Notes: generated by a model from the letters alone, not told the origin. A DNA stretch of 64,000 nucleotides from IMGVR_UViG_3300032770_000002:1-64000, one strand, 5' to 3'; positions 15,163-58,885 are shown, counted from the first letter of the stretch. Numbers and translations are program-made.

Positions 15163-15179
15163 AGATAGCATCAAGAACA

Positions 15180-22368: not shown

Positions 22369-22684
22369 GTTGAAGACAGCAGTTGAAGCGGCGATGGCGC
22401 GGTCTGAAAAGTCCCACCTAATCCCGCCAATGACTCACCCGCTGTCTCAATACTGGGAACAACCCAATCGCTTTGACATTGAGGTCGATGAGACCCACGC
22501 GTTGATGGGTCAAACGACTTTCAACCTGCTCCACGACTACTCAAACTCACAGCCAACCGGAGCATATGAGGGTAAAATGTGGCGGGCTTTTTACAGGCTG
22601 GACGGCTGGTGTCTCCTGTGGTTCGGGCCCAGCGACAAACCTGACATGGTTTCGGTGAACGCTAGAAAAATTCTAATCGCATGA
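22361..22684 (+). CDS. Conserved phage hypothetical protein
   Basis: [15 protein letters not shown]...[17 protein letters not shown]; overlapped in the operon. Confidence 0.65.
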
Positions 22685-23568
22685 AAGAATATCTCGACTT
22701 AATGCACCGCGTGCTTCAAGGGAAGCGACGAAAGGACAGGACTGGAGTAGGGACCGTCGGCGTGTTTGGTGAACAGATTAAGATCGACTTGCAGAAGGGG
22801 TTTCCACTCTTAACGACAAAGAAACTCCACACCAAAAGCATCGTTTACGAGCTGCTTTGGTTCCTCAAAGGGTTGACTAACAACGACTGGCTTAAGGAGC
22901 GTGGCGTCACGATTTGGAATGAGTGGGCCGACGAGCACGGTGACCTTGGTCCGGTCTATGGGGAGCAGTGGGTCAAGTGGCACGGCCTTAAAAAGGACTG
23001 GATAGAGGATGATAACTTGGGCCCGCGTGAACCCATCTACCGTGAGGTGGTCGTGAATCAAATCGACAACCTCATTCGAGACTTAAAGGACAACCCATTC
23101 AGTCGGCGGCACATTGTCAGCGCTTGGAATGTCTCGATGATTCCACAGATGAGGTTGCCACCGTGCCACACACTTTGGCAGTGCTACGTTGAAGAGCCAA
23201 ATCAAGGTGACGACCACATCATCAGTGACTTTGACCGAAATTCGTTGAGCCTTCACCTCTACGCGCGAAGCATCGACCTTTTTCTCGGCTTGCCATTCAA
23301 CATTGCGTCATACGCCCTGCTTACGCACATGCTCGCGGCCGTGACTGGTTTGGCCGTTGGCCGGTTGATCATCTCATTCGGCGATCTGCACATTTACCTC
23401 AACCACATCGACCAGTGTCGTGAGCAACTGAATCGTGAGCCGAGGCCGCTGCCAAGACTGGCTTGGGGAAGACCGGACATCACGAGCATCTACGACTTCC
23501 AGTTTGAGGACTTCGTCTTTTGTGGCTACGATCCACACCCGGCAATCAAGGCTCAAGTTGCCGTATGA
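22681..23568 (+). CDS. thyA: Thymidylate synthase (canonical, dUMP-specific)
   Basis: [45 protein letters not shown] (Asn specificity residue), GDLHIY. Confidence 0.97.
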
Positions 23569-25901: not shown

Positions 25902-26201
25902 TTATGGCTTATTGGTGTCTATAAACTTGCGCAATTCAGCGTCTATCAGCGATAGACGGTTCAGGTCATTTTTGGTCTCTTCGACTCCTGGCTCGAGGAC
26001 CGTCATGATGCTGGCAAACAAGTGGTGGGCCCCGAAGAAGAACGCCTTGCGGCATTCTCGCCTTTGAACCTCACTCATTTTGTCCAATCCAGTTAGGATC
26101 TCGTAGGCGCGCCAGCCTCCTTCGACGACGAGGCCCTTGTCGTTCAGTTCCTTGGTTATCTGCTCAACGGCCTTCTTTACGTTCTCGTTCATACGTTCCA
26201 T
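25902..26201 (-). CDS. Hypothetical protein
   Basis: In-operon ORF overlapping the upstream stop. Confidence 0.6.
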   Translation of the reverse strand: MERMNENVKKAVEQITKELNDKGLVVEGGWRAYEILTGLDKMSEVQRRECRKAFFFGAHHLFASIMTVLEPGVEETKNDLNRLSLIDAELRKFIDTNKP

Positions 26202-37472: not shown

Positions 37473-37476
37473 AGCT

Positions 37477-37809
37477 TTAAGCAGAGAACGCGGTTTCTTG
37501 CTGGCCCCTGAACGGAACGATTCGAAACCGTTTTTCAGGTTCGTCATCAAAGACGATGCAGTCTAACTCCGTGCAGATTTTCTTGTCGTTGTCGAAGAGG
37601 AGGCTTCCACGGTCCATAAACCACGCCTGATAGGTGATCGCCGTGTCAAGTTTTACCGTGATTTGCGAGCCGTCACCGCAGACAATTTTGACGTCGTCGC
37701 CTTCGACAGTCAGCGTGCGAACAACTTGATTGTGAACGGCGCAAATGATCTTGCCAGACTTGTGGCCGCCCATCAGGTCTCTGAATGACTCAATATGCAC
37801 TTGTTCCAT
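37477..37809 (-). CDS. Hypothetical early protein
   Basis: ATG at 37809 is 7 nt after the -10 box. Confidence 0.6.
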   Translation of the reverse strand: MEQVHIESFRDLMGGHKSGKIICAVHNQVVRTLTVEGDDVKIVCGDGSQITVKLDTAITYQAWFMDRGSLLFDNDKKICTELDCIVFDDEPEKRFRIVPFRGQQETAFSA

Positions 37810-40056: not shown

Positions 40057-42720
40057 ATGAGCCAAGACATCACAATTCAAACGTTTCCCGGGGTCTACGT
40101 CAACGTCCTTGACAACAGCTTTCCGACGAACATCGTTAGCCGATATAGTCTCGGCGTCACGGGCGTGGCATCCAAGGGGCCAATGAACGTCCCGACTCGG
40201 ACGCCATCCGTTACTTCATTCGTCAGCCAGTTTGGAAAGCCAGTTACGTCGAACCCAATGCCTGCCCAAGCCGTTGCGGCTGTGGGTGACTTTTCCGACG
40301 GCACCTGGTTTAACCGGGTCGGCCACGTCTACTCTGCCGTCGCAAGTGACGCGGCGAGTGTCGTTGGCTCAGGGTCGCCAGACCCATACAAGATTTACAC
40401 CTCATCGGCCAAGGACTTTCAACTTGGCGACTACATTCGCATCGTCGAGGCCGGCAAGATTTCGACGGTTAACGCGAGGGTCTCAGACTACATTCCTTCA
40501 GGCAACGTCATCAACCCGACTGGCCTTCAATTGGTGAGCACTGGTCCTGAAGCGGTTGAACTGGCCGACGACTACGTCAGCGCGTTCATTGACCGGAGTG
40601 AAGCCACGGACGCCGCGTCCAACGCCGAGTCATTCCTCAGTTCCATTGTCTACGGCGATAGCAACTATGTTGAAAGCGCCGGCTTCGTGACAGGGAGCAA
40701 GACGTCCTACAGTTTTGACGTCGATGGCTTTGTTGGGCCGCTGCCAATTACCAGCCTTGTCGTTTCCAGCGGCGTGGCCACGCTGACAATGTCCAACATG
40801 CCACGTTACCAAGTCGGCGATTACGTCCACATCGCCAACGCGGCCGTTAGCGGGTGCAATGGTGAGTTCGTCGTTCTCACAAGCGACCTCAGCAGTCAGA
40901 TCACCTTCAACGTGCCTGGCGAACTTGGGCCAGAGCTGCTTACGGGTGAAGCCCCTGTGGGTGGTTATGTGACCATCGACACGACTCCTGGAGCGTCTTA
41001 CGACTACACCAACGGCGTTGGTGAGACCCTCATCAATGGCGCCGCGCAAACTCAGACTACCGGAACGGTGGTTGCTCAGGGAAGCTTTATTCGAGTCTAC
41101 ACGTCGGCGCCGACGGCCACTGGGTCGTTGAAGCTTGTCGAGGGCGTGGCCGATGGAACGATCGCCGTGGCCGATGGTGCGACGGCTATCACCGTGGCCA
41201 TTCTTGCCCCTGGCGACCTCATCAAGATCGTTCAAACCAGTGGAGGTGGCCGGTCGACGACCTATGAGGCGATGGTCCAAGAAATCATTGGTGGGACGCA
41301 CGTCAATCTTTACCCGTCAAATGTGACGAACATCGGTTACCAGGCCGTGTCGCTGCAGGACAACTATTCAGCTGGCAACATCTATAAGGCTCACCGCGAC
41401 GCAAACGGCAACCTTGTCACGACGCTAGCCATTCACATGATTGCCGCCTCTGCCGGCACGTGGGCAAACAGTGACGGCGTTGCAAATGGACTGTGGGTCA
41501 CGGTGTCTCCTGGCGCCAACGCTGGCACGAAGAAGTTGCTCGTCTACGTTGACGGCACACTGGTTGAGACGATCGACAACTTGTCGATGGATTCGAGCTC
41601 AACGGACTACTTCCCAGCTCGCATCAACGGGCTCTCACAAAACATCGCCATCTTGACTGACACCGCTGGCAACCCAATTGGCATGCTTGGCTCTAGTCCG
41701 CCCGCCAACACGATGAACGGCTGGTCTGGCGCTTCGCAGAAGGTCAATTTTGCGGTCTTTGGCGACGAGTCACTCAACTATGGCCAAGGCTTTGACGGCG
41801 AAGTGATGACCACGCAGGACGTCATCGGCACGCTGTCTTCGACTGGAGCTTACACCGGGCTGCGGGCCTTCACACGCCCTGGCTCGAATTACAACTTGAG
41901 CGACCTCATCTGTCCTGGCATCACCGACTTAGCAGTGCACCAGGAAATGATCCTCATTGCCACGAAGATTTTTGCTGAGGCGCTCATTGACTCGCCAAGT
42001 GGGATAAACGGCCGACAGATCGTTGATTGGAGCAATGGCGCTGGAGACTATTCTGGCTCGCGTGCGGCCATTACAGCTTGGCAGGCTTCGCTGCCATGGA
42101 ATTGGATCAGCATCACTGACCCATTTACGGGCAACTCCATCAGTATCCCGCCGACAATCGCCTTGGCTCGCCAACGGGCCTTTACGTTTGACCACTTTAA
42201 GCCGTGGTATGCGGCTTCCGGCGTGAATCGTGGCGTCATCTCGATTGCCAACAGCGTCGAGTTTGCCACGGTCGATGATGACACGCGAAATGGCTTCATG
42301 GCATCAGGGCAGTCCATCACGCCCATCCTGGATGACTTTGGTCAAATCTTGGTCTGGGGCGACAGGACACTTCAGCGGACCAACTCCAAGCTGATCCAGC
42401 TGAGTGTGGCGACGCTGGTCAACTACCTGGCACTGAACATTGGGCAGCTTGGTCGGAAGTATATCTTCGACCCCAACGACCAGGAGCTGATCGTCCTCTT
42501 CACGAACGACCTTCGGTCGCTGTTTGAAGGGGTCAAGTCTGACCGTGGTATTTCGGACTACAATGTGGCCGCGGACAACTCGATCAACACGCCCGAAGTG
42601 CAAAACCAGCACGCAGCCATTGTCAACGTGGACTTCATTCCATTTGGGTCACTGGAGCGGCTCTACGTCAACCTGATTGTCGATCCTTCGGGCGCTACGA
42701 TCACCAACATCACGGGCTAG
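40057..42720 (+). CDS. Contractile tail sheath protein with inserted domains
   Basis: FPGVYVNVLD, GVASKGPMNVP, WYAASGVNRGVI, GQILVWGDRTL, RKYIFDPND, GISDYNV, LERLYV. Confidence 0.93.
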   Translation: MSQDITIQTFPGVYVNVLDNSFPTNIVSRYSLGVTGVASKGPMNVPTRTPSVTSFVSQFGKPVTSNPMPAQAVAAVGDFSDGTWFNRVGHVYSAVASDAASVVGSGSPDPYKIYTSSAKDFQLGDYIRIVEAGKISTVNARVSDYIPSGNVINPTGLQLVSTGPEAVELADDYVSAFIDRSEATDAASNAESFLSSIVYGDSNYVESAGFVTGSKTSYSFDVDGFVGPLPITSLVVSSGVATLTMSNMPRYQVGDYVHIANAAVSGCNGEFVVLTSDLSSQITFNVPGELGPELLTGEAPVGGYVTIDTTPGASYDYTNGVGETLINGAAQTQTTGTVVAQGSFIRVYTSAPTATGSLKLVEGVADGTIAVADGATAITVAILAPGDLIKIVQTSGGGRSTTYEAMVQEIIGGTHVNLYPSNVTNIGYQAVSLQDNYSAGNIYKAHRDANGNLVTTLAIHMIAASAGTWANSDGVANGLWVTVSPGANAGTKKLLVYVDGTLVETIDNLSMDSSSTDYFPARINGLSQNIAILTDTAGNPIGMLGSSPPANTMNGWSGASQKVNFAVFGDESLNYGQGFDGEVMTTQDVIGTLSSTGAYTGLRAFTRPGSNYNLSDLICPGITDLAVHQEMILIATKIFAEALIDSPSGINGRQIVDWSNGAGDYSGSRAAITAWQASLPWNWISITDPFTGNSISIPPTIALARQRAFTFDHFKPWYAASGVNRGVISIANSVEFATVDDDTRNGFMASGQSITPILDDFGQILVWGDRTLQRTNSKLIQLSVATLVNYLALNIGQLGRKYIFDPNDQELIVLFTNDLRSLFEGVKSDRGISDYNVAADNSINTPEVQNQHAAIVNVDFIPFGSLERLYVNLIVDPSGATITNITG

Positions 42721-43258
42721 TGGGTCTAATGTCGTTGATTACGGCAAATCGACCGAAGGCTTTTCTGGCCGCTCTATTGTAGGCTTTGGCTGCAGCAAGT
42801 TCACTTCGAAACATTCCAATTAGTCGGCCTTTTTTGTTGACTTGGATTTTAGCCTTCCAAAGGCCAGTCTTGGAATGGAGATGAACACCTTTAAATTTTG
42901 ATGTTAGACCTGATCGTCGGTCTTTTGGCCGATTACCCTGTTGTTGCACTTCTGTGGCCACTCTAAGATTGCAACGACGGTTGTCAAGACGCTCTCTATT
43001 AATGTGATCGGGTTCGCAACCACGCGGCACATTAATGATCCAGTAGGCCATCTGTAAATTTGCATGATTGGCGTAACCGTTATGTCCAAGATGCCATCTA
43101 TGTTTGTTGAGGCGGTCATAGTCGCGATTATTTACTATAGTGAAACCACACGAAGTGAAAACGGTATTACGTCCAGGGCGTCCAGGATGAATGGCTCTAA
43201 CAAGTTGAATGAGTCTTGCGTCAGGATCAAGAAGTGCTTCAAAGAATGCTACCGTCAT
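42710..43258 (-). CDS. HNH endonuclease with AP2 domain
   Basis: PDHINRERLDNRRCNLR; SKFKGV...WKAKI...AAKAYNRAARKAFGRFA. AT-rich and inverted between sheath and tube. Confidence 0.9.
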   Translation of the reverse strand: MTVAFFEALLDPDARLIQLVRAIHPGRPGRNTVFTSCGFTIVNNRDYDRLNKHRWHLGHNGYANHANLQMAYWIINVPRGCEPDHINRERLDNRRCNLRVATEVQQQGNRPKDRRSGLTSKFKGVHLHSKTGLWKAKIQVNKKGRLIGMFRSELAAAKAYNRAARKAFGRFAVINDIRPTSP

Positions 43259-43339
43259 TGATTCCAAGAACTGTAGATAAGCTGTGGAAAAGATGATTTT
43301 TATCGTCAGCGAAAAATTAGTAAATCCATCTAAGCCGTT

Positions 43340-43951
43340 ATGAGCAAAATGCTCTACAAAAATGAATGGGGCAGCCAAGGGTCAAACCTTGACCCACAAC
43401 GCACAGACCTGTTCCGGTTTTGGATCAACCTGCCGGCTGTCATTGGCGGCATGGGAAACTGGCAGGAGAACGTGTCGTTCGCCGTCCAGTCGTTTCCGTT
43501 CCCTGAACGCGCGCAGCAGACCTTTGAGATGAAGTATCTCAACCAGGTCAACCACATCCTCGGGTCTGACACGCCGACAGGGCCGATCGAGGTCCCTGTT
43601 CGCTACGCATTCACCCAGCCGACGGCTCAACTGCTCTATCGCTGGCACTACCTGACGTCGAACCCTCGAACTGGCTCAGTTGTTCGCACGACTCAGATCA
43701 AGACTTACGGGTTTTTCGCGTGGCTCATCCCGAGAAAGTTGACTCCCGACATCATCGACCAAATGGAAGTCGACCCGAACGCGCTTCAAATTGGCATGCA
43801 GTATCAGCTCGAAGGATGCATGCCGATCAACCTCAAGCCGACGGACGCCAACATGCTTGAGGGCAACGTGCCAGTCACGTTGACGTTCCGCCTGCAAATC
43901 GACAGGTTTTACCCGGTGAGTGTCGACGCGTCGAACATGATCTTTGCTTGA
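43340..43951 (+). CDS. Tail tube protein (gp19-like)
   Basis: LDPQRTDLFRF, FPFPE, LYRWH, YQLEGCMP, LTFRLQID; follows the sheath gene. Confidence 0.8.
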   Translation: MSKMLYKNEWGSQGSNLDPQRTDLFRFWINLPAVIGGMGNWQENVSFAVQSFPFPERAQQTFEMKYLNQVNHILGSDTPTGPIEVPVRYAFTQPTAQLLYRWHYLTSNPRTGSVVRTTQIKTYGFFAWLIPRKLTPDIIDQMEVDPNALQIGMQYQLEGCMPINLKPTDANMLEGNVPVTLTFRLQIDRFYPVSVDASNMIFA

Positions 43952-43993
43952 AGTTGGAGTTGAGTGACAGACAGATGGGGTTGAACAGGAACG

Positions 43994-44032
43994 AAAAGAC
44001 CCGCAGGGCTTGCCACCTTGCGGGTCTTTTTT
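43994..44032. terminator. Bidirectional intrinsic terminator
   Basis: AAAAGACCCGCAGG-loop-CCTTGCGGGTCTTTTTT between convergent genes. Confidence 0.88.
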
Positions 44033-44047
44033 GACAACTGACGGACG

Positions 44048-44485
44048 CTAACGAATGTTCACTTTGACCAGCCCATGGAAGCGGGCCAGGTCTTCAGCTC
44101 TGACACGACCGGTTAAGTCGTCGACCGTCATCTCGGTCTTGTAGGCCTTGACAGTCACTCGCGTGCCGCGTTTGGCGATGGTGAACAGGGCCTTCGGCCA
44201 GATGTAGACCTTCGTCTCGCCATCCTCGATGACGAGAAGCGTATTATCTCGGTTGGAGTTCCTGGCTTGCATCGAAGGGAGGTGGAGGAGGTTGTAACGT
44301 TCGTTCAACTCCTTCGACAGGCGGTCCAGTCTCGCCTTGGTCATGCACTTCAAGTCGGTCGTAGTCGAGCTTGTGATGACCGTCGCAGTCTCCCTCCCTG
44401 GGTTGATTTTCACAACCTTCAGGTCCTGGGTGTTGATCGACACAAAGGTCTCCCCCTTGGCAATCAGTATGTGCGTTGGTTTCAT
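44048..44485 (-). CDS. Hypothetical protein
   Basis: GGAG RBS before the ATG; good codon pattern. Confidence 0.6.
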   Translation of the reverse strand: MKPTHILIAKGETFVSINTQDLKVVKINPGRETATVITSSTTTDLKCMTKARLDRLSKELNERYNLLHLPSMQARNSNRDNTLLVIEDGETKVYIWPKALFTIAKRGTRVTVKAYKTEMTVDDLTGRVRAEDLARFHGLVKVNIR

Positions 44486-44906
44486 TGATTTTCTCCGGTT
44501 CTTTGATGTCGGTCACTTCAAGTTCGACCTCAACGTGGGTAACACGCCTAATTGGCCGATACGATTGTTCGACATACTTCTGCTGTTTTTGTAGTGCACC
44601 CGCGTAAAACCGCTTGAGTCGGGCAACAAGTTCAACGAGGACGCATCGGTTGAAGACCAGGTGGCTGAAGAGCATGCCAACGAACCAAACTGCTGGCAAA
44701 ACCCACAGCCACCGATTCTCGCCAATGGCAAGAAGCATGCCGGCTGTGAACGCCGTTGGTCCATAGACGAGCGCGCCAATCCTGTTGAACCGCCGAAGCG
44801 CATTGGTTAAATCGCGAACTCGAGCAGGTTGCAGTTGGAACGTAAGAACGAAGCGTCGACTTCGCCAACTAAGCCTTCGTCCGATCCAATGAAGCGGATG
44901 TCGCAT
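44244..44906 (-). CDS. Two-TM membrane protein with uncertain ends
   Basis: Core GALVYGPTAFTAGMLLAIGENRWLWVLPAVWFVGMLFSHLVF looks real; both ends overlap neighbours heavily. Confidence 0.35.
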   Translation of the reverse strand: MRHPLHWIGRRLSWRSRRFVLTFQLQPARVRDLTNALRRFNRIGALVYGPTAFTAGMLLAIGENRWLWVLPAVWFVGMLFSHLVFNRCVLVELVARLKRFYAGALQKQQKYVEQSYRPIRRVTHVEVELEVTDIKEPEKINETNAHTDCQGGDLCVDQHPGPEGCENQPREGDCDGHHKLDYDRLEVHDQGETGPPVEGVERTLQPPPPPFDASQELQPR

Positions 44907-45334
44907 CGGCCGTTCTTCGACTGTAACAAGCTCACTGCCTTGAGGTTCACCACCGTAAAATCGCCCGGGCCTGGTTGAACAGGTGCCACAGCGGTGGTCG
45001 TTGCTGCAGCAGTTACGGGTTCTTGTCGGCCTTCCGGCGCACGTTCAGACGTGGCTGGCGGCGTGATGGATTGACCGAGCATGAGCTTGCGGAACGGGGA
45101 GTCATTTCCAAGCAGGTTTTTAGCGGTCAACGCTGATTGGAATGAAGCCTCAACTCCAGCACTGCCCGGCGAGCACCAGCCTTTGTTCGAAAGGACGCGA
45201 AGGACCGTGGATTTCTTTGCACGGCCAGACGTCTTGACGTCCTCGAGGAGGGCACGTTCGACTTCGGCGAGGGCCGCAGTCAACTCGGCATCAGTTCTTT
45301 GATTGATTCTCATAGTTTCAAGCGCAAATTGCAC
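44807..45334 (-). CDS. Hypothetical early protein
   Basis: Directly downstream of a GTTTAC promoter. Confidence 0.6.
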   Translation of the reverse strand: MQFALETMRINQRTDAELTAALAEVERALLEDVKTSGRAKKSTVLRVLSNKGWCSPGSAGVEASFQSALTAKNLLGNDSPFRKLMLGQSITPPATSERAPEGRQEPVTAAATTTAVAPVQPGPGDFTVVNLKAVSLLQSKNGRCDIRFIGSDEGLVGEVDASFLRSNCNLLEFAI

Positions 45335-45345
45335 TCTTGGGCCAT

Positions 45346-45374
45346 ATCATACCACGAAATTGGATTTTGTAAAC
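45346..45374 (-). promoter_or_regulatory. Putative early promoter
   Basis: GTTTAC-N17-TATGAT with GTGG extension. Confidence 0.75.
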
Positions 45375-45383
45375 AGAAAAACG

Positions 45384-45851
45384 TTAAAAATTTAATTTGG
45401 CAAAGGAACCAAAAATTTTTCTGGCTTGACGATCATAAACCACGGCCGCTTCCGCTTCATCGTCAAACTGCCCAATAAAATTGTGTTGAACGCTAACACT
45501 CCATTTTCGATTTTGCTTATTCCAACTAACTCCTTTAAATTGACTTGAACGATTTGGGGTTTTACGTCTATTTGCGGTATTTTGGGCATGGGTCGCTGGT
45601 CGAAGATTTGACCGTGTATTATTCAGACCGTCACCGTTTTCGTGATCAACCTCTGGCAATCCAATTTTTGCAGCTATTTCACGGTGCATGTAAACACTCT
45701 TCTCACCGGCCGACGGGACGCTCTTGGCATACCAGTAAGTTTTATGTTTTGTTTGACTCTTTACCGCATACCATTTTCGTAGACTAAGCCATTCAAAATC
45801 TTCATCATCGACTAAAGCCGATTTATTTTGCGTAAGCGGTATTCTTTTCAC
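45384..45851 (-). CDS. HNH endonuclease with AP2 domain
   Basis: GTG overlapping the upstream TAG; IPLTQNKSALVDDEDF, YMHREI, VDHENGDGLNNTRSNLR, SQFKGVSW. Confidence 0.9.
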   Translation of the reverse strand: MKRIPLTQNKSALVDDEDFEWLSLRKWYAVKSQTKHKTYWYAKSVPSAGEKSVYMHREIAAKIGLPEVDHENGDGLNNTRSNLRPATHAQNTANRRKTPNRSSQFKGVSWNKQNRKWSVSVQHNFIGQFDDEAEAAVVYDRQARKIFGSFAKLNF

Positions 45852-47542
45852 TAAAAATTTCCGATGACCAGTGCCGGGCATGTCTGCTGGTCTGCCTTTT
45901 TTGCGTTGAACCGCAGGTCGTTTATGGCGTCTTCGACGCTGAAAACAATTGGCACGCCGTGGACGTTGAACGACGTGTTTATCAACGGAGTTCCGCACTC
46001 CTCAAGGATGCGTCGAATTGGAGCGGGTTCTGTCGGGTAAATGATTTGCGGCCTTCCTGACCATGAACTTTGGTCAGGATAAACGTGGGCGACGCCCATA
46101 AAATTATCCACAGGACGGACGTAATTGAGCGTCGTGATCATGTAGCGTTCTGAACCGACAACTCTGTTGAGGTTTGATTCAAAGGCCCACTTCGCCCACC
46201 TGGATGAAACGACCGGGGCAAATGGCATGACCGTATTTCGGCCGTTGATGTAATTGATGGTGTCAACATTTTCACTCGTCGGAACGGCTAGCGTGGACGT
46301 GTTGCAGAGTGCTCGCGGGCCAAACTCCATGTTTCCGTGGATGGTGTTGACAAGTTTGTTGGCCTTCAACAATTGCAAGACCTGCTCAATGTAGTCGTCA
46401 AGCGTGTGGGCAACGCGAACGTCAAGCTCGTCGCCATTGAGCATGATTCGCCTGAACGAAAGGTCACGCCTTCCCCACTTGAGCGACGTGAACGGAAATG
46501 AATATCCCTTGGAGGCGTAGACTCCGATCGCCGCTCCTTGGTCACCAGCAAGTGGAACTGCGCAAAACTGGCCGGAGATGGAGCTGAGAATGGAGTGGTT
46601 TAGCTTGACGTTGTAGTGCACGCCGCCTGTCACGATGACGTGCTTGACTCGGCTCCACGTCAAGATGAACCGGTAGGCTTCTTCGATGACCGTTTGAATG
46701 TAGTGGCCAACCACGACTCGAGTTTCCCACTGGTTAACGGTATTTAGGGCCTTGACGATCTTTCTCAGCCTTGCCCTGATTTTTCGTCTGGCCGACTCCA
46801 TGTCGTTAACTTGGATGAAGTCATCGAGTTTCGACTCCTGAGGGCGGAGAAAATTTGCGCTGCAAATCGAGGCCCACTCTTCGGCGTGGTCTTTTGCCAT
46901 CTGACGAAGCCACTCGATTTCCCGGCTACGGAGGACTTCGTTGACGTGACTCTCATAGCCTAGAAATTTATACTCGTCTTGGTTCATCGTCATCCCGACA
47001 AATTCAGTGGCATACTGGTAAAGCAATCCAAGTGACTTGTCGTAACCGTAGATCCGTGAAAGAAGTTGTGGCGTCCAACGCTCGGTGTCCGGCTGAATGA
47101 CGTAGATGGAAAACACCTCTTGGGCTGTGCCAAAACCGTCACTGACGACGATGTGGACGTCCCCCTCCGGCACTTGGCGCATGTGGCGTCGGTAAAATTC
47201 CACGGCCGCCCAAGCGTGTGAGTCGTGGTGTGTAAATCTGTGGTCTACGGACACGATCTTGCACTTTGGCAGGAACGTGCGAAGCACGTCAGGCTGCCAA
47301 TACTTCTGGAGCCTTGCGTGACGGGCTTTTTCAAGATTTTCACAGTCAAACCAGTGTGAGACGTAAACCGTCACGTCCTTCTTGAGCTTGGTGTGCTTGA
47401 TGACCTCATTGATGGCGTTGATTGGGAAGCGTGAGTCACTTTTCTTGCGAGTAAGCCGCTCTTCTTCGTATCCAATAACGTCAACGCCGTCGGTCCAGAT
47501 GGCCGAGGCATTGTGTCCGAGTGTGAGAAGTAGGTTGTTCAC
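45851..47542 (-). CDS. Carbamoyltransferase, NodU/CmcH/TobZ family
   Basis: GHNASA, YEEERLTRKK, HHDSHA, SDGFG, SLGLLY, EYKFLG, GGVHYNVKLN, GDQGAAIG, EFGPRAL, PFAP, INTSFNVHG.PIV. Confidence 0.93.
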   Translation of the reverse strand: MNNLLLTLGHNASAIWTDGVDVIGYEEERLTRKKSDSRFPINAINEVIKHTKLKKDVTVYVSHWFDCENLEKARHARLQKYWQPDVLRTFLPKCKIVSVDHRFTHHDSHAWAAVEFYRRHMRQVPEGDVHIVVSDGFGTAQEVFSIYVIQPDTERWTPQLLSRIYGYDKSLGLLYQYATEFVGMTMNQDEYKFLGYESHVNEVLRSREIEWLRQMAKDHAEEWASICSANFLRPQESKLDDFIQVNDMESARRKIRARLRKIVKALNTVNQWETRVVVGHYIQTVIEEAYRFILTWSRVKHVIVTGGVHYNVKLNHSILSSISGQFCAVPLAGDQGAAIGVYASKGYSFPFTSLKWGRRDLSFRRIMLNGDELDVRVAHTLDDYIEQVLQLLKANKLVNTIHGNMEFGPRALCNTSTLAVPTSENVDTINYINGRNTVMPFAPVVSSRWAKWAFESNLNRVVGSERYMITTLNYVRPVDNFMGVAHVYPDQSSWSGRPQIIYPTEPAPIRRILEECGTPLINTSFNVHGVPIVFSVEDAINDLRFNAKKADQQTCPALVIGNF

Positions 47543-48510
47543 TTTCGCTTGTCTATCGCGTTAAATAGCAGGTTCATGACGCACTGGTAGTGGACATATT
47601 TTGAATTGCCACGAGACGTGGTGCAGAACAGCGACCTCATGGCAGGTGAAATTGGAGCTGTCAAGTTTCCTTCAATCGTCAGCAGGTCATGAAGCAACAT
47701 CGAGGCTTCGCCGGGCTCTAGCGGAGGAAATGTCAGAGCCATGCCAGCGGGTTCACCGACTATAAGCGTGTCATCTCGAACGTGGAATGAACCGACATTG
47801 TGGTGGTAATAACCCATCTTAATGCCACTTCGGCCTTTTCCCCAAAGTTCGGCACGGACATAGTCCATCAAAAACGTAAAGAAGGCCACGTCATATCGAA
47901 ATCCATTCCACAGTTCATTGGACCGCATTGTCGCAATGGCGTGAAGCGCACCGTCACGCACTAAAAATTGCAAACTGGTCGTGCAAATGTGGTCTTTTGT
48001 GTCACTGAGATTGACCCTGGGACGGTTAAACAGGACGACGGCTTGCCTTGACATCGGGTCCTTTGCCAACCGCTTGATGGCCAACTCAAGCTGTCCTTCC
48101 TCGAAGACATACTGGCCGTAATTCGAGTTGATGTCGACACGCGTGTCTTCTGGAATGCTGCCGTCACGATGTTTGGCTGCGACGTTGTCCGTGATGCGTT
48201 TCCACATGTCTGGCCGATACTTGTCGATGCCATGAAGACGCTGATCGGCTTTGGCATACCACGCCAATTGGGCACCGACGTAGTCAATGTCGTCTTCAGG
48301 CCTTGAGGTTTGGGTGAAAAAGACCGCCCCTGGGACTTCGACGCTAAAGTGAAAATTCAGCAACTCGAGCCAACGAACGCCCTGGTGGTCTTCGACAACT
48401 GGAGCCTTGCAGAGTTGGTCGATACAGCTTGAAAATTTCAGCCCAAGTTTTTCATCCTTTTGCAATGTAGGCGTCGATGATGCTGTTGATGGTATTGACA
48501 TCGGTTTCAT
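47539..48510 (-). CDS. Thymidylate-synthase homolog, dCMP hydroxymethylase (T4 gp42)-like
   Basis: INSNYG, DPMSRQ, DHICT (catalytic Cys), MRSNELWNGFRYD (Asp at the cytosine-specificity position), NVGSFH. Confidence 0.85.
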   Translation of the reverse strand: MKPMSIPSTASSTPTLQKDEKLGLKFSSCIDQLCKAPVVEDHQGVRWLELLNFHFSVEVPGAVFFTQTSRPEDDIDYVGAQLAWYAKADQRLHGIDKYRPDMWKRITDNVAAKHRDGSIPEDTRVDINSNYGQYVFEEGQLELAIKRLAKDPMSRQAVVLFNRPRVNLSDTKDHICTTSLQFLVRDGALHAIATMRSNELWNGFRYDVAFFTFLMDYVRAELWGKGRSGIKMGYYHHNVGSFHVRDDTLIVGEPAGMALTFPPLEPGEASMLLHDLLTIEGNLTAPISPAMRSLFCTTSRGNSKYVHYQCVMNLLFNAIDKRK

Positions 48511-49063
48511 TGTCAGCGCTGACTTCGGTTATTTGGGACGACTGGTAGAAGCCGTGGATAAGCGTCCGGATAAACAAGAACTCGACATCCTGGAGAAGCC
48601 CCAGTTCGTTTGGGCGCATCGCATCAGACTCCTTTTTAGGCAACGGCCGAAACAGGAAGATGTGGTCGTAGGTTCTTGCGGTGGTCAGCGTTCGAAAGTA
48701 AAGCCACTTGAAGAAGCTCGTGTATTTTTCGAGCTGCAAGCTTGTCAACATTGACTTGTCAACGTAAAAAACGTAGTAGAAAAATGAATCGGCAAGTGAC
48801 CGGTCGGTCAGGATGATGGAATTCGGGTGTTTCTTGAGGGCGGCCTGTTCAGCGTTGAACTTCTCGCTGATGATTTCAATTTGCAGTTCAATGTATCGGA
48901 CTGGGTCCCGTCGAAGGGCGTCAATGTTGTCAATGCTAGCCCGGTCACGAATGCAGTCGCCAAGAACGACGACCCCGTTATAGTTTGTCCTTTCGGCAAT
49001 CTTTCGAATCATCGTGGACTTGCCCGAATGACACGCACCAGAAAAAGCGATCAACTTGCTCAT
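48452..49063 (-). CDS. P-loop (d)NMP kinase-like protein
   Basis: IAFSGACHSGKSTMI, ILTDRS, YDHIF; first gene of the modification operon. Confidence 0.75.
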   Translation of the reverse strand: MSKLIAFSGACHSGKSTMIRKIAERTNYNGVVVLGDCIRDRASIDNIDALRRDPVRYIELQIEIISEKFNAEQAALKKHPNSIILTDRSLADSFFYYVFYVDKSMLTSLQLEKYTSFFKWLYFRTLTTARTYDHIFLFRPLPKKESDAMRPNELGLLQDVEFLFIRTLIHGFYQSSQITEVSADNETDVNTINSIIDAYIAKG

Positions 49064-49093
49064 CGTTGGGTAGAACTGTTCTTTGTGGTTGGC

Positions 49094-49867
49094 ATGGCAA
49101 TCAAGACCAAACTTACAATTGACGTTCCCTCACGTGAACGGTTGAAACAGACCATTACGCTTTTGTCCCAAGGAGCGGCCAACCCAAAGGCATTCCCTGA
49201 CGGCCAGATTACAGTTTACCCATGGGATGTCCAGGTTGACGACTGGCTTGTCAAGTCAGGCCGCAACACGGACAGCAGCGTCTTTGACGTGATCCCTAAA
49301 CTCGCTGAACTTAACGGCTGTGACCTGGACGACCTCTTTGTTGGCGACGCAAGCACCATCCTTCTGGTCTCGCGATCGCTTCGTCACGGCAACAAAATTG
49401 ACTTTTCGCCCGTCTGCACGAACTGCCGCAAGACGAACAACGTGGTGACGCTAGACGTTCCAAGGCAGCTTCGCAAACTGGCTGAGAAACCCAAGGGGTG
49501 GGGCGGGACTGACACCATCGTCCTGCCCAGCATTAAGGACGAGATTGAGATTCGTCCACTGCGGCTTAAGGATGAAAAGGCCATTGAAAACATGACCCCT
49601 GAGGCCGCAGCGATGGTCCCGCCGGTGACGGCTCGCATGTGCCGCGCCATCGTGTCAGTCGGCGGTGGAAAGCCAGACAGTGTTGCGGAGATCGTGTCCT
49701 ATCTTAGGCGCCTTGACCCAGTTGACCAAGACTACTTGAGTGAACAGATTGACGCGCTTCACCCGCGCCTCGACAGCGATGTCACCTTCGTCTGTGACTA
49801 CTGCGGAAAGCAGTTCGTCTACACGATTAGCTTTGACCGCAACTTTTTTCGTAGCCGCGTCGCTTAA
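49094..49867 (+). CDS. gp26-like baseplate hub assembly / tail assembly chaperone
   Basis: DLFVGDASTILLVSR, CTNC and CDYC pairs, EIEIRPLR, C-terminal RNFF. The true start at 49094 is divergent from the kinase gene. Confidence 0.72.
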   Translation: MAIKTKLTIDVPSRERLKQTITLLSQGAANPKAFPDGQITVYPWDVQVDDWLVKSGRNTDSSVFDVIPKLAELNGCDLDDLFVGDASTILLVSRSLRHGNKIDFSPVCTNCRKTNNVVTLDVPRQLRKLAEKPKGWGGTDTIVLPSIKDEIEIRPLRLKDEKAIENMTPEAAAMVPPVTARMCRAIVSVGGGKPDSVAEIVSYLRRLDPVDQDYLSEQIDALHPRLDSDVTFVCDYCGKQFVYTISFDRNFFRSRVA

Positions 49868-50032: not shown

Positions 50033-51031
50033 TTGTTTACAGTGAATAAGTGGCTTGAGGTCATCAATGTTGAGTGTCCGGATCACGGGCCGTATCAGGT
50101 TCAACGACAAGCTTTTGACGGGAAATTAAAAGGTTGTCCTGATTGTATTAAAATTTATCGAGTTTCAAAGGTGAATCAAATTCGAAAATTAGTCAAAAAT
50201 CGCCCTGGCCCAAAGAAGTGGTATAAAACTGAAACTGGACGTTTATTCCTTCTCCGACAGGCCGCTGAAAATAGTCGAAGAGCTGAATTGAGAAGACGTA
50301 GAAGGTTTACTCCTCAAGTCAAAAACTTAGTTAGAAAATTTTGTCATGTTGATAAAAGGTGGCTTCAAAGCAACGGATATTCGATTGATGCCGCACTTCG
50401 ATTTTATGCTGATGTCTACGTTGATTTTGATGTCGATTTTGACGTTCTCGACTCAGTTATTACACGAGATGAACGTTTGTCCGGCCATGAGCACGATCGT
50501 CCAACAATCAGGGCATCTACCATCGCCAGGTGTATTCGATGGACTGGCACGGTTGGTCAGGGTAAAATTCAACAGCCAATATTTTTCAAGTCATTCTTGA
50601 AAACTGGAAGTGGCAACTATCCCATTATAGTTGCACGTCGTGCGGCATTTGAATTTTTTCACGGCTTAAGTCTACCAGATGACGTGTATGTTTTACCTAA
50701 CTGTAAACATTGTCTGGATGTCTTATGCATTAATCCATTACACCATTTTTTAGGTGTGGAGAGAAATCGTCAGGACTACGTCAGAAGTATTTCAAATGTT
50801 GGTCGTCCAAAGACTAATGTGAAATCAACCCAATCCTCAGTGCCGCTTTCAATAAGGCCATTGAAGCTATATCCACTTCCAACCGGCTGGACAAGACGAT
50901 ATTTTGGTAAAATCACACGAACTGGCAAAGATGGAGAAACATGGCGCAAAAATTTTTTGAATGTGGCGAAACACGGTGGAAAAACTTTAGTGGAACTAGT
51001 AGTTGATGCCCGTGTTAATGGAGAATCGTGA
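50033..51031 (+). CDS. Degenerate HNH (Zn-binding-loop type) homing endonuclease-like protein
   Basis: CPDHG...GCPDC N-terminus; CIRWTG...VARRAAFEFFHG...C...CINPLH; AT-rich. Confidence 0.6.
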   Translation: MFTVNKWLEVINVECPDHGPYQVQRQAFDGKLKGCPDCIKIYRVSKVNQIRKLVKNRPGPKKWYKTETGRLFLLRQAAENSRRAELRRRRRFTPQVKNLVRKFCHVDKRWLQSNGYSIDAALRFYADVYVDFDVDFDVLDSVITRDERLSGHEHDRPTIRASTIARCIRWTGTVGQGKIQQPIFFKSFLKTGSGNYPIIVARRAAFEFFHGLSLPDDVYVLPNCKHCLDVLCINPLHHFLGVERNRQDYVRSISNVGRPKTNVKSTQSSVPLSIRPLKLYPLPTGWTRRYFGKITRTGKDGETWRKNFLNVAKHGGKTLVELVVDARVNGES

Positions 51032-51206
51032 CACCGTCAAATGCCCGAAGTGCGGCCACGAGTTCCGGTGTGACGTTGGCTGGCAGAAAGCTAGTGTTGC
51101 AGTTGGGTGTCCGAAGTGTTCGGAGATGATTCACCTGAATCTGCGCGGCTCTGGCACCAGCCCTGATGCTCGGCCAATCGTCGGGCCCAGGCCAGAAAAG
51201 CCGTGA
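51018..51206 (+). CDS. Small Zn-ribbon protein
   Basis: VKCPKCGHEF...VGCPKCSEMI. Confidence 0.55.
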   Translation: MENRDTVKCPKCGHEFRCDVGWQKASVAVGCPKCSEMIHLNLRGSGTSPDARPIVGPRPEKP

Positions 51207-51804
51207 CTGTGAAGGCGTTTTTTGCGATGTTACACTGCTTGCAACACGGGACCACATTGTCATCAATGTAACCTCGCTTGGAGTCAACTCGGTCAATCCC
51301 CATGTAACAGAATCTTGTCGGGTTAAATCTTCCAAGGCCATTTCTATATTCGACTGGGTAAGGTCTGCATCCACAATAGTGACAGTCGCTTTGCATAAGT
51401 CTTTTGGCCAATTCCTTGTCGAGGTTAAATTCAACATTCATTCTGAGAGATCGTTGATATATCGAGTTGAAGACTCGCGTGAATCCGGCTTCAAATGAGT
51501 TAATGCGAGTGACCCTGGTGGCCGCGGCAGTTCTGATCTTTTGGGCGCATTGAGCGCACTGTTTCATGCTATGGTTTTTCCTGCCGAATAAAGACGATGG
51601 TGGAACTAATTTGACGTTTCCGCAGGTGCATTGAAGTTTGAAGCACCACAGCAGTTTTCCACCGTAACGTGAATTTTGGGCCCACTCGTAACCGATGACT
51701 TTGAAACGACCGATTTCAGACCCGATTGGGTGTTCTTGAATGTATTGAGCACGTTTTTCTTTTCGAAGATTTTTACGGTGTTCCTCCGTCATTATGTATT
51801 TCAT
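51091..51804 (-). CDS. HNH endonuclease
   Basis: CTCG; CHYCG...GIDRVDSKRGYIDDNVVPCCKQCNIAK. Confidence 0.88.
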   Translation of the reverse strand: MKYIMTEEHRKNLRKEKRAQYIQEHPIGSEIGRFKVIGYEWAQNSRYGGKLLWCFKLQCTCGNVKLVPPSSLFGRKNHSMKQCAQCAQKIRTAAATRVTRINSFEAGFTRVFNSIYQRSLRMNVEFNLDKELAKRLMQSDCHYCGCRPYPVEYRNGLGRFNPTRFCYMGIDRVDSKRGYIDDNVVPCCKQCNIAKNAFTVTAFLAWARRLAEHQGWCQSRADSGESSPNTSDTQLQH

Positions 51805-58324: not shown

Positions 58325-58885
58325 ATGAATATAGAGCCAACTACTACCGCCACGGTAGCTGAACAACCCATAGTTTGGAAGAAGTTTGAAGACGCCAGAC
58401 CGTATACGTCTGTCATTGGTTTTGCGTTTGACGAGCACGGCCGATTTCCAATCTTTTTTAGGTCAAATAAGGTCAGGAGTGCCAAGAACGCGTGGAGCAT
58501 GCCGTCTGGTCTTCACGAGATTGGACTCCCATTCTGGCACCAGTTCAAGGTGGAACTGAAGGAAGAGCTCAACATTGAGATGGACACAGGCCCAATCCAC
58601 AAGATTGGTTTCTACGAAAACATCATCCGCTCAGTTCCTGGCGAGGACAACTGGCACTGGGTGCTGCTGCTTGTCGCCGCCAAGGTGAAGTCGCTTGGGA
58701 CGCTGATGAACATGGAGCCTGAAAAGCACTCTGACATTCGCGTCGTGACTGTCGACGAGCTTTATAGTCAATACATGGACAAGACTTGGTCGAAAAATCT
58801 CAAGGAAGCCTTGCTTGAGTATCAGCCAGTCGTTCGTCGATTGGTCAAGCCTTCAGAGACGTCACCCAAGGCCGTCACCGTTTAA
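58325..58885 (+). CDS. Nudix hydrolase
   Basis: WSMPSGLHEIG...ELKEELNI Nudix box variant; PEKHSDIRVV. Confidence 0.82.
   Translation: MNIEPTTTATVAEQPIVWKKFEDARPYTSVIGFAFDEHGRFPIFFRSNKVRSAKNAWSMPSGLHEIGLPFWHQFKVELKEELNIEMDTGPIHKIGFYENIIRSVPGEDNWHWVLLLVAAKVKSLGTLMNMEPEKHSDIRVVTVDELYSQYMDKTWSKNLKEALLEYQPVVRRLVKPSETSPKAVTV

What the first reader, a model, noticed from the sequence alone, without database searches (positions are those of the whole stretch)
45851..49063. Cytosine hypermodification operon: dNMP kinase, dCMP-modifying TS homolog and carbamoyltransferase
Seen: three overlapping minus-strand genes form one operon, and a separate canonical ThyA exists at 22681, so the second TS homolog is not needed for dTMP. 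Its RSN...GFRYD motif has Asp at the site where ThyA has Asn, marking cytosine specificity as in T4 gp42. Known: the T4 logic is dCMP to modified dCMP, then kinase, then incorporation into DNA. NodU/CmcH enzymes O-carbamoylate hydroxyls, and phage members have been reported to carbamoylate 5hmC. Inference: this jumbo phage replaces C with a carbamoylated derivative, possibly a new one given the altered active site and the extra glycosyltransferases.
Basis: partly seen in the sequence, partly recalled or inferred. Interest (0 to 1): 0.85.

Follow-up and report, generated by a model that had tools for sequence, protein, structure and literature searches.

The report
Phage cassette for carbamoylated hydroxymethylcytosine DNA
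A 230-kb uncultured T4-like phage carries a tightly linked kinase, dCMP hydroxymethylase homolog and carbamoyltransferase that most likely turn the cytosines of its DNA into 5-carbamoyloxymethylcytosine, a modification pathway first described in 2021, so this is a new example rather than a new kind.

Summary
Three minus-strand genes at 45851-49063 encode a P-loop nucleotide kinase, a thymidylate-synthase-family cytosine C5 enzyme and a NodU/TobZ-type carbamoyltransferase. They overlap: GTGA between the last two, and up to 59 nt between the first two. A canonical ThyA sits at 22681-23568.

The TS homolog carries the full dCMP hydroxymethylase signature: Cys, Asp at the Asn177 site, Asp three residues before the Cys, Ser-x-Tyr, and the Ser167/Arg126 deoxyribose markers. 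It lacks the Asp169Asn mark of 5-hydroxy-dCMP synthases. Its nearest solved relatives are T4 dCMP hydroxymethylase and MilA.

The same three genes stay linked in every related viral contig I could inspect. This matches the pathway of Yang et al. (eLife 2021): 5hmC carbamoyltransferase makes 5-carbamoyloxymethylcytosine.

Two details are not in that paper. The kinase is a cassette-specific dNK/TMPK-fold family, unrelated to T4 gp1. The window's TS homolog also belongs to a 45-member clade in which the otherwise universal catalytic Glu58/60 is Gln or Leu. Cassettes with a canonical Glu use the same kinase and carbamoyltransferase, so a new base is unlikely.

The glycosyltransferases lie 30-45 kb away and show no link to the cassette. 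No dCTPase was found in the 112 kb inspected. Verdict: new member of a known kind, moderate interest.

The parts
48452..49063 (-). P-loop nucleotide kinase (203 aa) with a dNK/TMPK-like fold. Proposed 5-hydroxymethyl-dCMP kinase. First gene of the cassette.
   Evidence: Pfam AAA_28 1e-11 and dNK 4e-6; phrog 'thymidylate kinase'. AF2 model pLDDT 87; Foldseek top hits are thymidylate and deoxynucleoside kinases. The P-loop GACHSGKS is at residues 8-16, so the ATG at 49063 is the start, and the 186-aa database call cuts the P-loop. Relatives are always next to CT and TS homologs.
47539..48510 (-). Thymidylate-synthase-family dCMP C5-hydroxymethylase homolog (323 aa as the longest ORF; the start may be 48510, 48501 or 48465).
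   Evidence: The best solved relatives by sequence are T4 dCMP hydroxymethylase (3e-18) and MilA (5e-17). By fold, the top 11 Foldseek hits are MilA or T4 dCH. Signature residues C176, D207, D173, S129/Y131, S197 and R155 are present; Q81 stands in place of Glu58/60.
45851..47542 (-). NodU/CmcH/TobZ-type O-carbamoyltransferase (563 aa). Proposed 5-hydroxymethylcytosine carbamoyltransferase. GTG start inside GTGA, overlapping the TS stop.
   Evidence: phrog_1601 4e-62; Pfam Carbam_trans_N and Carbam_trans_C; PDB NovN, GdmN and TobZ. The HHDxH, DGFG and GDQG motifs are invariant in 19 homologs. 36-38% identical over its full length to the CTs of Xp15, Effie and the Bacteroides phages, which sit beside Asp177 TS homologs.
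22681..23568 (+). Canonical thymidylate synthase ThyA (context: dTMP synthesis is covered separately, as with td plus gene 42 in T4).
   Evidence: Pfam 5e-105; NCBIfam NF002497 at 372 bits, above the cut-off of 327; Asn177, Leu143, His147, Glu58 and Asp169.

Best explanation
The three genes are one conserved cassette that makes the phage's DNA cytosines into 5-carbamoyloxymethylcytosine (5cmdC). Step 1: the TS homolog adds a one-carbon unit from methylene-tetrahydrofolate to C5 of dCMP, and water captures the intermediate, giving 5-hydroxymethyl-dCMP. Step 2: the kinase phosphorylates it to the diphosphate. A host nucleoside-diphosphate kinase makes the triphosphate, and the phage polymerase incorporates it. 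Step 3: the carbamoyltransferase makes carbamoyl-AMP from carbamoyl phosphate and ATP and transfers the carbamoyl group to the 5-hydroxymethyl oxygen, either on the dNTP or on newly made, preferably single-stranded, DNA. A separate ThyA keeps thymidine normal. Shown here: family membership, active-site signatures, overlapping gene arrangement and strict linkage of the three genes across divergent phages. Inferred: every catalytic activity, the kinase's substrate, the stage at which carbamoylation happens and the extent of C replacement.
For: TS homolog. Its nearest solved proteins by sequence and by fold are cytosine-nucleotide hydroxymethylases, ahead of all thymidylate synthases. It has Cys146, Asn177->Asp, Leu143->Asp and Ser94/Tyr96, which Park et al. 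(PMC6400193) give as the hydroxymethylase signature; their D145N mutant is dead. It has Ser167 and Arg126', the deoxyribose markers of the MilA study (PMC5175136). Position 169 is Glu, not the Asn diagnostic of 5-hydroxy-dCMP synthases (PMC13326640).

Carbamoyltransferase. It has the full two-domain architecture with conserved metal and nucleotide motifs. Yang et al. showed that a phage CT found beside an Asp177 TS homolog converts 5hmC in ssDNA, dsDNA and 5hmdCTP to 5cmdC using carbamoyl phosphate and ATP (PMC8670742). The sequence printed in that paper shares, by eye, the motifs LLLTLGHNASAI, THHD.H, GNMEFGPRALCNT, INGR.TVMPFAPVVS and LINTSFNVHGVPI with the window protein.

Linkage. The order kinase-TS-CT recurs in related 27-154-kb contigs. 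A profile scan of IMG/VR with the kinase found 11 loci: CT was adjacent in 10 of the 10 with enough flank, and a TS homolog was present in 9 of those 10, even where the gene order differs. Bacteroides phages carry CT, a kinase homolog and a TS homolog in a row.

Kinase. A confident model has a TMPK/dNK fold. Lee et al. list TMPK-like 'nucleotide kinases' next to TS homologs in three other cytosine-hypermodification clusters, and show that a cognate kinase raises incorporation of the modified base.
Against: No enzyme here was assayed, and no DNA was analysed. Gln81 replaces Glu58/60, which Park et al. describe as conserved in all TS/CH/dCH members and needed to activate the folate cofactor. The enzyme may therefore work differently or slowly. 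The kinase has no detectable homology to T4 gp1 (hhalign probability 3%). Its fold does not separate nucleoside kinases from nucleotide kinases. I could not align the window CT to the characterised enzyme computationally, because its sequence has no reference in the tools. No dCTPase, MazG or dCMP deaminase was found in the window or in the adjoining sequence inspected, about 112 kb of 230 kb. Complete replacement of C therefore remains open.
Confidence: 0.72

Rival explanations
1. Same pathway, but the kinase is not the 5hm-dCMP kinase. It could be a deoxynucleoside salvage kinase feeding dCMP to the hydroxymethylase, or it could act on another nucleotide. Phosphorylation of 5hm-dCMP would then fall to a gp1-type kinase elsewhere in the genome or to a host enzyme.
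For: Foldseek hits include deoxynucleoside kinases (dNK, dCK, dAK) as strongly as thymidylate kinases. The conserved D-R-S motif resembles the E-R-S motif of dNKs (own knowledge of the dNK family). 118 kb of the genome were not inspected, so a gp1 homolog may exist there.
Against: This kinase family was found only next to CT and TS homologs, and its gene overlaps the TS gene. That fits a step specific to the modified nucleotide better than general salvage. Lee et al. found that a cognate dNMP kinase is what boosts incorporation of a modified dCMP.
Confidence: 0.15
2. The Gln58/Glu169 clade of TS homologs makes a C5 substituent other than hydroxymethyl, so the carbamoyltransferase yields a carbamoylated base not yet described.
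For: Glu58/60 is replaced by Gln or Leu in a well-supported clade of 45 sequences (support 0.996). Asp169 is often Glu and Tyr209 is variable there. The literature calls the Glu universally conserved and catalytic. A single active-site change, D169N, is already known to switch this fold to hydroxylation.
Against: All other hydroxymethylase signature residues are kept. Divergent cassettes with the same kinase and CT families carry TS homologs with canonical Glu58, Asp169 and Tyr209, which argues for one shared product. Position 169 stays acidic, not Asn.
Confidence: 0.07
3. The carbamoyltransferase acts on a non-nucleic-acid acceptor such as a sugar, a metabolite or a virion glycan, as other NodU/CmcH enzymes and cyanophage homologs may do. 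The phage DNA would then carry plain or glycosylated 5hmC.
For: The family is broad. Yang et al. note CTs in unmodified contigs flanked by glycosyltransferases. The window encodes several glycosyltransferases.
Against: The window CT is translationally coupled to the TS homolog (GTGA). Its full-length relatives at 34-67% identity sit beside TS homologs in every locus examined. Cyanophage CTs match only the C-terminal half, at 25-29% identity. The glycosyltransferases are 30-45 kb away.
Confidence: 0.05

Closest known systems
5-hydroxymethylcytosine carbamoyltransferase pathway giving 5-carbamoyloxymethylcytosine (Yang et al., eLife 2021, PMC8670742)
   Same: A NodU/TobZ-type two-domain carbamoyltransferase encoded beside a TS homolog with Asp at position 177, in a tailed phage. 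Many sequence motifs are shared with the characterised enzyme. The predicted chemistry is the same: carbamoyl phosphate plus ATP, with O-carbamoylation of 5hmC.
   Different: The window cassette includes a dedicated kinase, and the word 'kinase' does not occur in that paper. The partners that paper reports, PRA-PH/MazG-like pyrophosphatase and dCMP deaminase, were not found near the cassette. The TS homolog lacks Glu58. The host genome is a 230-kb T4-like myovirus.
Bacteriophage T4 hydroxymethylcytosine pathway (gp42 dCMP hydroxymethylase, gp1 dNMP kinase, td, alpha/beta-glucosyltransferases, gp56 dCTPase)
   Same: The logic is the same: a TS-family hydroxymethylase with Cys, Asp179, Asp145 and Ser94/Tyr96, a phage kinase, a separate thymidylate synthase, and decoration of the hydroxyl.
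   Different: About 27% identity to gp42, with Gln instead of Glu60. The kinase is not homologous to gp1. The decoration is predicted to be carbamoyl, not glucosyl. No gp56-like dCTPase has been seen so far.
MilA, CMP hydroxymethylase of mildiomycin biosynthesis
   Same: It is the best structural match over the full length, including the C-terminal extension. It has Asp at positions 177 and 143.
   Different: MilA has Ala176/Lys133' for ribose. The window protein has the Ser/Arg pair of deoxyribose-specific enzymes.
5-hydroxy-dCMP synthases of RB69, DLP3 and RL38J1 (Lee et al., NAR 2026, PMC13326640)
   Same: TS homologs with N177D and an acidic residue at position 143, clustered with a TMPK-like nucleotide kinase and with group-transfer enzymes.
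   Different: They carry the diagnostic D169N and use a flavin and O2. The window protein and its whole clade have Glu or Asp at 169.
5-hydroxymethyluracil DNA kinase (5-HMUDK) clusters of thymidine-hypermodifying phages
   Same: A P-loop kinase gene co-located with a TS-family hydroxymethylase gene.
   Different: No homology beyond the P-loop to M6 gp54. Those systems act on uracil (Asn177) and pair with aGPT-Pplase/AADT genes, none of which are seen here.

Membership tests
dCMP hydroxymethylase (T4 gp42 type, TS superfamily) | Catalytic Cys (E. coli C146 / T4 C148) | tested here: met
   Cys176 is invariant in alignments A1 and A6 and in 177 of 177 family sequences.
dCMP hydroxymethylase (T4 gp42 type, TS superfamily) | Asp at the Asn177/Asp179 position (cytosine specificity) | tested here: met
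   Asp207 in GFRYD aligns to T4 Asp179.
dCMP hydroxymethylase (T4 gp42 type, TS superfamily) | Acidic residue three positions before the Cys (Leu143 in TS, Asp145 in T4), plus Ser94 and Tyr96, which hold the substrate water | tested here: met
   Asp173, Ser129 and Tyr131. Criterion from PMC6400193 and PMC13326640.
dCMP hydroxymethylase (T4 gp42 type, TS superfamily) | Catalytic Glu58/Glu60 that activates methylene-THF | tested here: not met
   Gln81 is in register (Q-L-A-W against E-L-E-W). The position is Gln or Leu in all 44 full-length members of the clade.
dCMP hydroxymethylase (T4 gp42 type, TS superfamily) | Deoxyribose markers Ser167 and Arg126' (MilA has Ala and Lys) | tested here: met
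   Ser197 and Arg155. Criterion from PMC5175136.
dCMP hydroxymethylase (T4 gp42 type, TS superfamily) | Conversion of dCMP plus methylene-THF to 5hm-dCMP | not testable with these tools
   Needs an enzyme assay.
5-hydroxy-dCMP synthase (RB69 gp48 type) | Asn at position 169 (D169N) | tested here: not met
   Glu199. No member of the clade has Asn at this position: the 45 members have Glu, Asp or, in two cases, Ser.
5hmC carbamoyltransferase (Yang et al. 2021) | Carbam_trans_N (Kae1-like) plus Carbam_trans_C (YrdC-like) architecture with conserved His/Asp metal motifs | tested here: met
   Pfam hits to both domains. H105, H106, D107, H109, D135 and D334 are invariant in 19 homologs. PDB hits to NovN, GdmN and TobZ.
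5hmC carbamoyltransferase (Yang et al. 2021) | Co-occurrence with a TS homolog carrying Asp177 | tested here: met
   Overlapping genes in the window. The same holds in all related loci.
5hmC carbamoyltransferase (Yang et al. 2021) | Close sequence relationship to the assayed enzyme | tested here: inconclusive
   The sequence is printed in the paper, but it has no reference in the tools and was not among the top 120 database hits. Only a by-eye comparison of motifs was made.
5hmC carbamoyltransferase (Yang et al. 2021) | Differentially conserved residues at TobZ positions 408, 421 and 423 | not tested
   No TobZ-numbered alignment could be obtained. TobZ ranked below the alignments that were printed.
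T4 gp1 dNMP kinase | Homology to gp1 | tested here: not met
   hhalign of kinase profile A3 against T4 gp1: probability 3%, P-loop region only.
dNK/TMPK-fold nucleoside and nucleotide kinases | P-loop plus the fold of thymidylate and deoxynucleoside kinases | tested here: met
   AF2 pLDDT 87. Foldseek against PDB and BFVD gives probability 1.00 and TM-scores of about 0.45 to 0.70 (up to 0.67 in PDB, 0.70 in BFVD) to TMPK, dNK, dCK and NadR-type kinases. Pfam AAA_28 and dNK.
5-HMUDK (hydroxymethyl-pyrimidine DNA kinase) | Homology to M6 gp54 | tested here: not met
   hhalign aligns only 22 P-loop columns. tblastn of phage genomes finds no 5-HMUDK phage.
Canonical thymidylate synthase ThyA (gene at 22681) | Score above the NCBIfam equivalog cut-off, and Asn177/Leu143/His147/Glu58 | tested here: met
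   NF002497 at 372.3 bits against a cut-off of 327. Residues confirmed.

The most novel reading that the evidence does not exclude
The 45-member clade of TS homologs that lost the 'universal' catalytic glutamate (Gln or Leu at Glu58/60, often with Asp169->Glu) uses a changed mechanism or cofactor. It would then deliver a different C5 group, so these jumbo phages carry a carbamoylated cytosine that has not been described. A lesser version: the clade shows that folate-dependent pyrimidine hydroxymethylation can run without that glutamate.
Probability: 0.08. Interest if true: 0.7.

Novelty: new member of a known kind. Interest (0 to 1): 0.4.

Why it matters
In the paper library I searched, 5-carbamoyloxymethylcytosine appears in a single study, which found it through metagenomic enrichment and one recombinant enzyme. 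No complete phage genome or full gene set has been tied to it there.

This window places the pathway in a near-complete 230-kb T4-like genome and defines a three-gene unit that can be expressed as it stands. It also names the likely missing kinase step. That kinase belongs to a family seen only with this pathway.

Finally, it exposes a natural clade of hydroxymethylase homologs without the textbook catalytic glutamate. That clade gives enzymologists a ready-made test of what the residue is needed for.

Practically, such DNA should resist many restriction enzymes and APOBEC-type deamination. This matters for sequencing and for host-range studies of uncultured large phages.

Tried and rejected
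- **Nucleotide similarity to sequenced phages:** none. Protein-level relatives in GenBank phages reach only 32-38% identity, and the capsid protein about 30%. No cultured relative can be used as a proxy.
- **Finding the assayed carbamoyltransferase in the protein database:** I looked among the hits using a few short motifs and did not find it in the top 120. A computed alignment was not made because the printed sequence may not be pasted.
- **5-hydroxycytosine synthase reading:** rejected on position 169.
- **dCMP methylase reading:** rejected on Asp at position 143.
- **CMP (ribo) hydroxymethylase reading:** disfavoured by the Ser167/Arg126 pair.
- **5-HMUDK-like DNA kinase reading:** no homology.
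- **T4 gp1 orthology:** rejected.
- **Search for a dCTPase, MazG, dUTPase or dCMP deaminase:** nothing turned up. I used Pfam and PHROG scans of all remaining window ORFs, tblastn with the Xp15, Effie and Bacteroides-phage neighbours, and precomputed Pfam on flanking loci from about -10 kb to 101.7 kb of the contig. The only candidate is a weak NUDIX protein.
- **Promoter and terminator scan of 43900-49400:** counts at chance level, so uninformative.
- **Glycosyltransferase follow-up:** an IMG/VR scan with the GT9-like protein found only the contig itself. No statement on its substrate is possible.
- **Walking the whole 230-kb contig:** stopped at the look-up cap. About 118 kb remain unseen.


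Full report
**What is in the sequence**

The reported interval holds three minus-strand ORFs:
- 48452-49063, 203 aa
- 47539-48510, 323 aa
- 45851-47542, 563 aa

Pfam and PHROGs assign them as follows:
- a P-loop kinase: AAA_28 1e-11, dNK 4e-6, phrog 'thymidylate kinase'
- a thymidylate-synthase-family protein
- a two-domain NodU/CmcH/TobZ-type carbamoyltransferase: phrog_1601 at 4e-62, with Carbam_trans_N and Carbam_trans_C

The TS stop and the carbamoyltransferase GTG start share the tetranucleotide GTGA. The kinase stop lies inside the 5' end of the longest TS reading frame. The TS start could be the ATG at 48510 or 48501, or the TTG at 48465. Each of these overlaps the kinase gene. The kinase start is the ATG at 49063, because the P-loop GACHSGKS occupies residues 8-16 and all homologs align from residue 1. 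The 186-aa gene call stored in the public database cuts the P-loop off. A consensus promoter and terminator scan gave chance-level counts and shows no internal terminator.

**Genome context**

The window is positions 1-64000 of a 230,253-bp viral contig, JGI 3300032770 Ga0335085_10000140. It encodes:
- a gp23-type capsid protein, an S77 prohead protease, a T4-type portal, a tail sheath and tube, and baseplate proteins
- UvsX-like recombinase, primase and SbcCD
- a canonical ThyA at 22681-23568

The ThyA passes the NCBIfam equivalog cut-off (372 bits against 327) and has Asn177, Leu143, His147, Glu58 and Asp169. There is no nucleotide match to any sequenced phage. The capsid protein is only about 30% identical to the nearest cultured phages. 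This is therefore an uncultured, distantly T4-like jumbo phage.

**The TS homolog**

By sequence, its best solved relatives are T4 dCMP hydroxymethylase (3e-18) and the CMP hydroxymethylase MilA (5e-17). Thymidylate synthases score 1e-5 or worse. An AF2 model (pLDDT 85.6) gives the same order by fold: the top 11 Foldseek hits are MilA or T4 dCH.

In E. coli ThyA numbering, the window protein reads as follows:

| Position | Window residue | Meaning |
|---|---|---|
| Cys146 | Cys176 | catalytic Cys |
| Leu143 | Asp173 | acidic residue of hydroxymethylases |
| Ser-x-Tyr | Ser129, Tyr131 | T4 Ser94/Tyr96 |
| His147 | Thr177 | as in T4 |
| Ser167, Arg126' | Ser197, Arg155 | deoxyribose markers |
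| Asp169 | Glu199 | stays acidic |

Park et al. define Asp145 with Ser94 and Tyr96 as the hydroxymethylase signature. They show that their D145N and Y96F mutants give no product, and their Ser94 mutants point the same way (PMC6400193). Lee et al. use the acidic residue at 143 in the same way. They also show that Asp169->Asn marks the flavin-dependent 5-hydroxy-dCMP synthases (PMC13326640). The window protein and its clade never have Asn there. The MilA study assigns ribose versus deoxyribose preference to Ala176/Lys133' versus Ser/Arg (PMC5175136). The window protein has the Ser/Arg pair. The enzyme is therefore best read as a dCMP hydroxymethylase.

**One real oddity**

The glutamate that Park et al. 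call conserved in all TS/CH/dCH members is Gln81 here. That residue is Glu58 in E. coli TS, Glu60 in T4 and Glu68 in MilA, and it activates the folate cofactor. The alignment is firmly in register: Q-L-A-W against E-L-E-W.

An exhaustive HMMER scan of 1.84 billion representative proteins found 3989 relatives but only 23 at E<=1e-30. In a tree of 177 family members, the window protein falls in a clade of 45 with support 0.996. In that clade the position is Gln (40) or Leu (4), with one truncated sequence, while the sister groups keep Glu. The clade also often has Glu at 169 and a variable residue at Tyr209.

The change does not track a different pathway. More divergent cassettes with the same kinase and carbamoyltransferase families carry TS homologs with canonical Glu58, Asp169 and Tyr209. 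I therefore read it as a tolerated or compensated substitution. A changed chemistry remains the low-probability novel case.

**The carbamoyltransferase**

It has both domains of the TobZ/NovN/GdmN family. The His/Asp motifs HHDxH, DGFG and GDQG and the C-terminal nucleotide-binding motifs are invariant across 19 diverse homologs. The family is large: 1347 hits at E<=1e-20 among the candidates scored.

Full-length relatives in Xanthomonas phage Xp15, Acinetobacter phage Effie and six Bacteroides phages (36-38% identity) all sit within a few genes of Asp177 TS homologs. Cyanophage carbamoyltransferases match only the C-terminal half, at 25-29% identity.

Yang et al. expressed one such phage enzyme from a contig that also encoded a TS homolog. 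They showed that it needs carbamoyl phosphate and ATP. It converts 5hmC to 5-carbamoyloxymethylcytosine in ssDNA (nearly 100% on an oligonucleotide), less well in dsDNA, and in 5hmdCTP (about 60%). It has no activity on 5mdCTP or 5hmdUTP (PMC8670742). Their printed sequence shares many long motifs with the window protein by eye. I could not compute an alignment because the sequence has no reference in the tools, and it was not among the top database hits.

**The kinase**

A confident model (pLDDT 87) matches thymidylate kinases, deoxynucleoside kinases and NadR-type kinases, with probability 1.00 and TM-scores of about 0.45 to 0.70. It is not homologous to T4 gp1. It is also not homologous to the 5-hydroxymethyluracil DNA kinase M6 gp54 beyond the P-loop.

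Its most telling property is its distribution:
- The word-indexed database search found ten relatives, several on the same short contigs as the TS homologs.
- GenBank phages have it only in the Bacteroides phages, between the carbamoyltransferase and a TS homolog.
- A profile scan of IMG/VR found 11 loci. The carbamoyltransferase is adjacent in all 10 with enough flank and a TS homolog is present in 9, even where the gene order has changed.

A kinase bound this tightly to the other two genes is best explained as the step that carries the modified monophosphate towards the triphosphate. Lee et al. show that a cognate kinase is what makes a modified dCMP appear in DNA. They also list TMPK-like 'nucleotide kinases' beside TS homologs in three other clusters. 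The substrate remains inferred.

**Synteny and insertions**

In relatives L005, L007 and L008 the cassette lies between baseplate/FEN genes and the tail tube and sheath, as in the window. Protein identities are 31-64% across the block. Four window genes have no counterpart there and look like homing-endonuclease insertions:
- HNH ORFs at 42710-43378, 45384-45998 (directly after the carbamoyltransferase) and 51091-51804
- a low-GC ORF at 50033-51031

**What is not supported**

The glycosyltransferase-like genes are weak GT2/GT9 matches 30-45 kb from the cassette. They sit at 1925, 3921 and 14221, with a fourth GT9 just outside the window beside a collagen-repeat protein. They lie among baseplate, head and recombination genes. 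Nothing ties them to DNA, although nothing excludes it.

No dCTPase, MazG, dUTPase or dCMP deaminase was detected in the window or in the flanking sequence inspected, about 112 kb in all. These are the partners Yang et al. report around such cassettes. The only candidate nucleotide hydrolase is a weak NUDIX protein with a degenerate box at 58325-58885. Whether all cytosines are replaced is therefore open.

**Verdict**

It is a new member of a pathway known since 2021. Two features are worth a specialist's note: a cassette-specific kinase family, and a natural clade of hydroxymethylase homologs lacking the catalytic glutamate. All activities are inferred from homology and linkage. The co-expression and LC-MS experiment listed under next steps would settle them.

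Noticed in passing
window 47539-48510 (residue 81) and 44 related proteins (P0002-P0031, P0162-P0176): A well-supported clade of TS-family hydroxymethylase homologs has Gln or Leu where every characterised TS, dCH and MilA has the catalytic Glu58/60. It often also has Asp169->Glu and a variable Tyr209. Bacteroides phage BF503P1_00040 has Leu there independently.
   Followed up: yes
window 42710-43378 (-), 45384-45998 (-), 51091-51804 (-), 50033-51031 (+): Three HNH endonuclease ORFs and one low-GC (0.44) ORF with a weak endonuclease hit flank the cassette. None has a counterpart in the syntenic contigs L005, L007 and L008, so they look like homing-endonuclease insertions. One sits directly after the carbamoyltransferase and overlaps its 3' end.
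   Followed up: partly
window 48452-49063: The public gene call for the kinase is 186 aa and starts at Met18, which removes the P-loop. The 203-aa ORF from the ATG at 49063 matches all homologs end to end.
   Followed up: yes
window 1925-3544, 3921-5162, 14221-15180; L010:14075-15235 (contig about 65.5-66.6 kb): Four glycosyltransferase-like genes (weak GT2 and GT9/heptosyltransferase matches) lie among baseplate, head and recombination genes. One is next to a collagen-repeat protein. Their substrate (virion protein, host envelope or DNA) is unknown, and the GT9-like protein has no close relative in IMG/VR.
   Followed up: partly
window 26189-27217 (-), 36372-37550 (-); L013:7122-8204, L013:18749-19810, L014:2886-3848: Several Amidoligase_2 genes (one with a WGR domain) and class-II glutamine amidotransferase genes are scattered over the genome. 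This gene set is known from large phages and has no assigned role here.
   Followed up: no
window 58325-58885 (+): NUDIX-domain protein (22.6 bits, just above the Pfam cut-off) with a degenerate NUDIX box, directly upstream of the SbcD-like gene. It is the only candidate nucleotide pyrophosphohydrolase found.
   Followed up: partly
window 44048-44906 (-): ORF 44244-44906 has a predicted membrane segment and is conserved in relatives. It runs 240 nt into the next conserved ORF, 44048-44485. In the overlap, the substitution pattern against L005 follows the frame of the downstream ORF only. Both ORFs, and 44807-45334, are co-directional with the cassette, conserved with it and of unknown function.
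   Followed up: partly
L012:15681-16640 (contig about 86.9-87.9 kb); L011:11101-12423: Outside the window the same genome encodes a Dam-like N6-adenine methyltransferase (MethyltransfD12) and a Sulfotransfer_4 protein.
   Followed up: no
window 19271-19825 (+), 22036-22368 (+): A LuxR/GerE-type HTH protein sits just after the capsid gene, and a DUF4326 protein lies just upstream of ThyA, separated from it by one small ORF (22361-22684).
   Followed up: no
L002:7547-8047 (Acinetobacter phage Effie gene 370): A small ORF lies between the MazG-like gene and the TS homolog in Effie's carbamoyltransferase cluster. Its N-terminus weakly matches the window kinase's P-loop region (E 0.014), hinting that a kinase belongs to that cluster too.
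   Followed up: no
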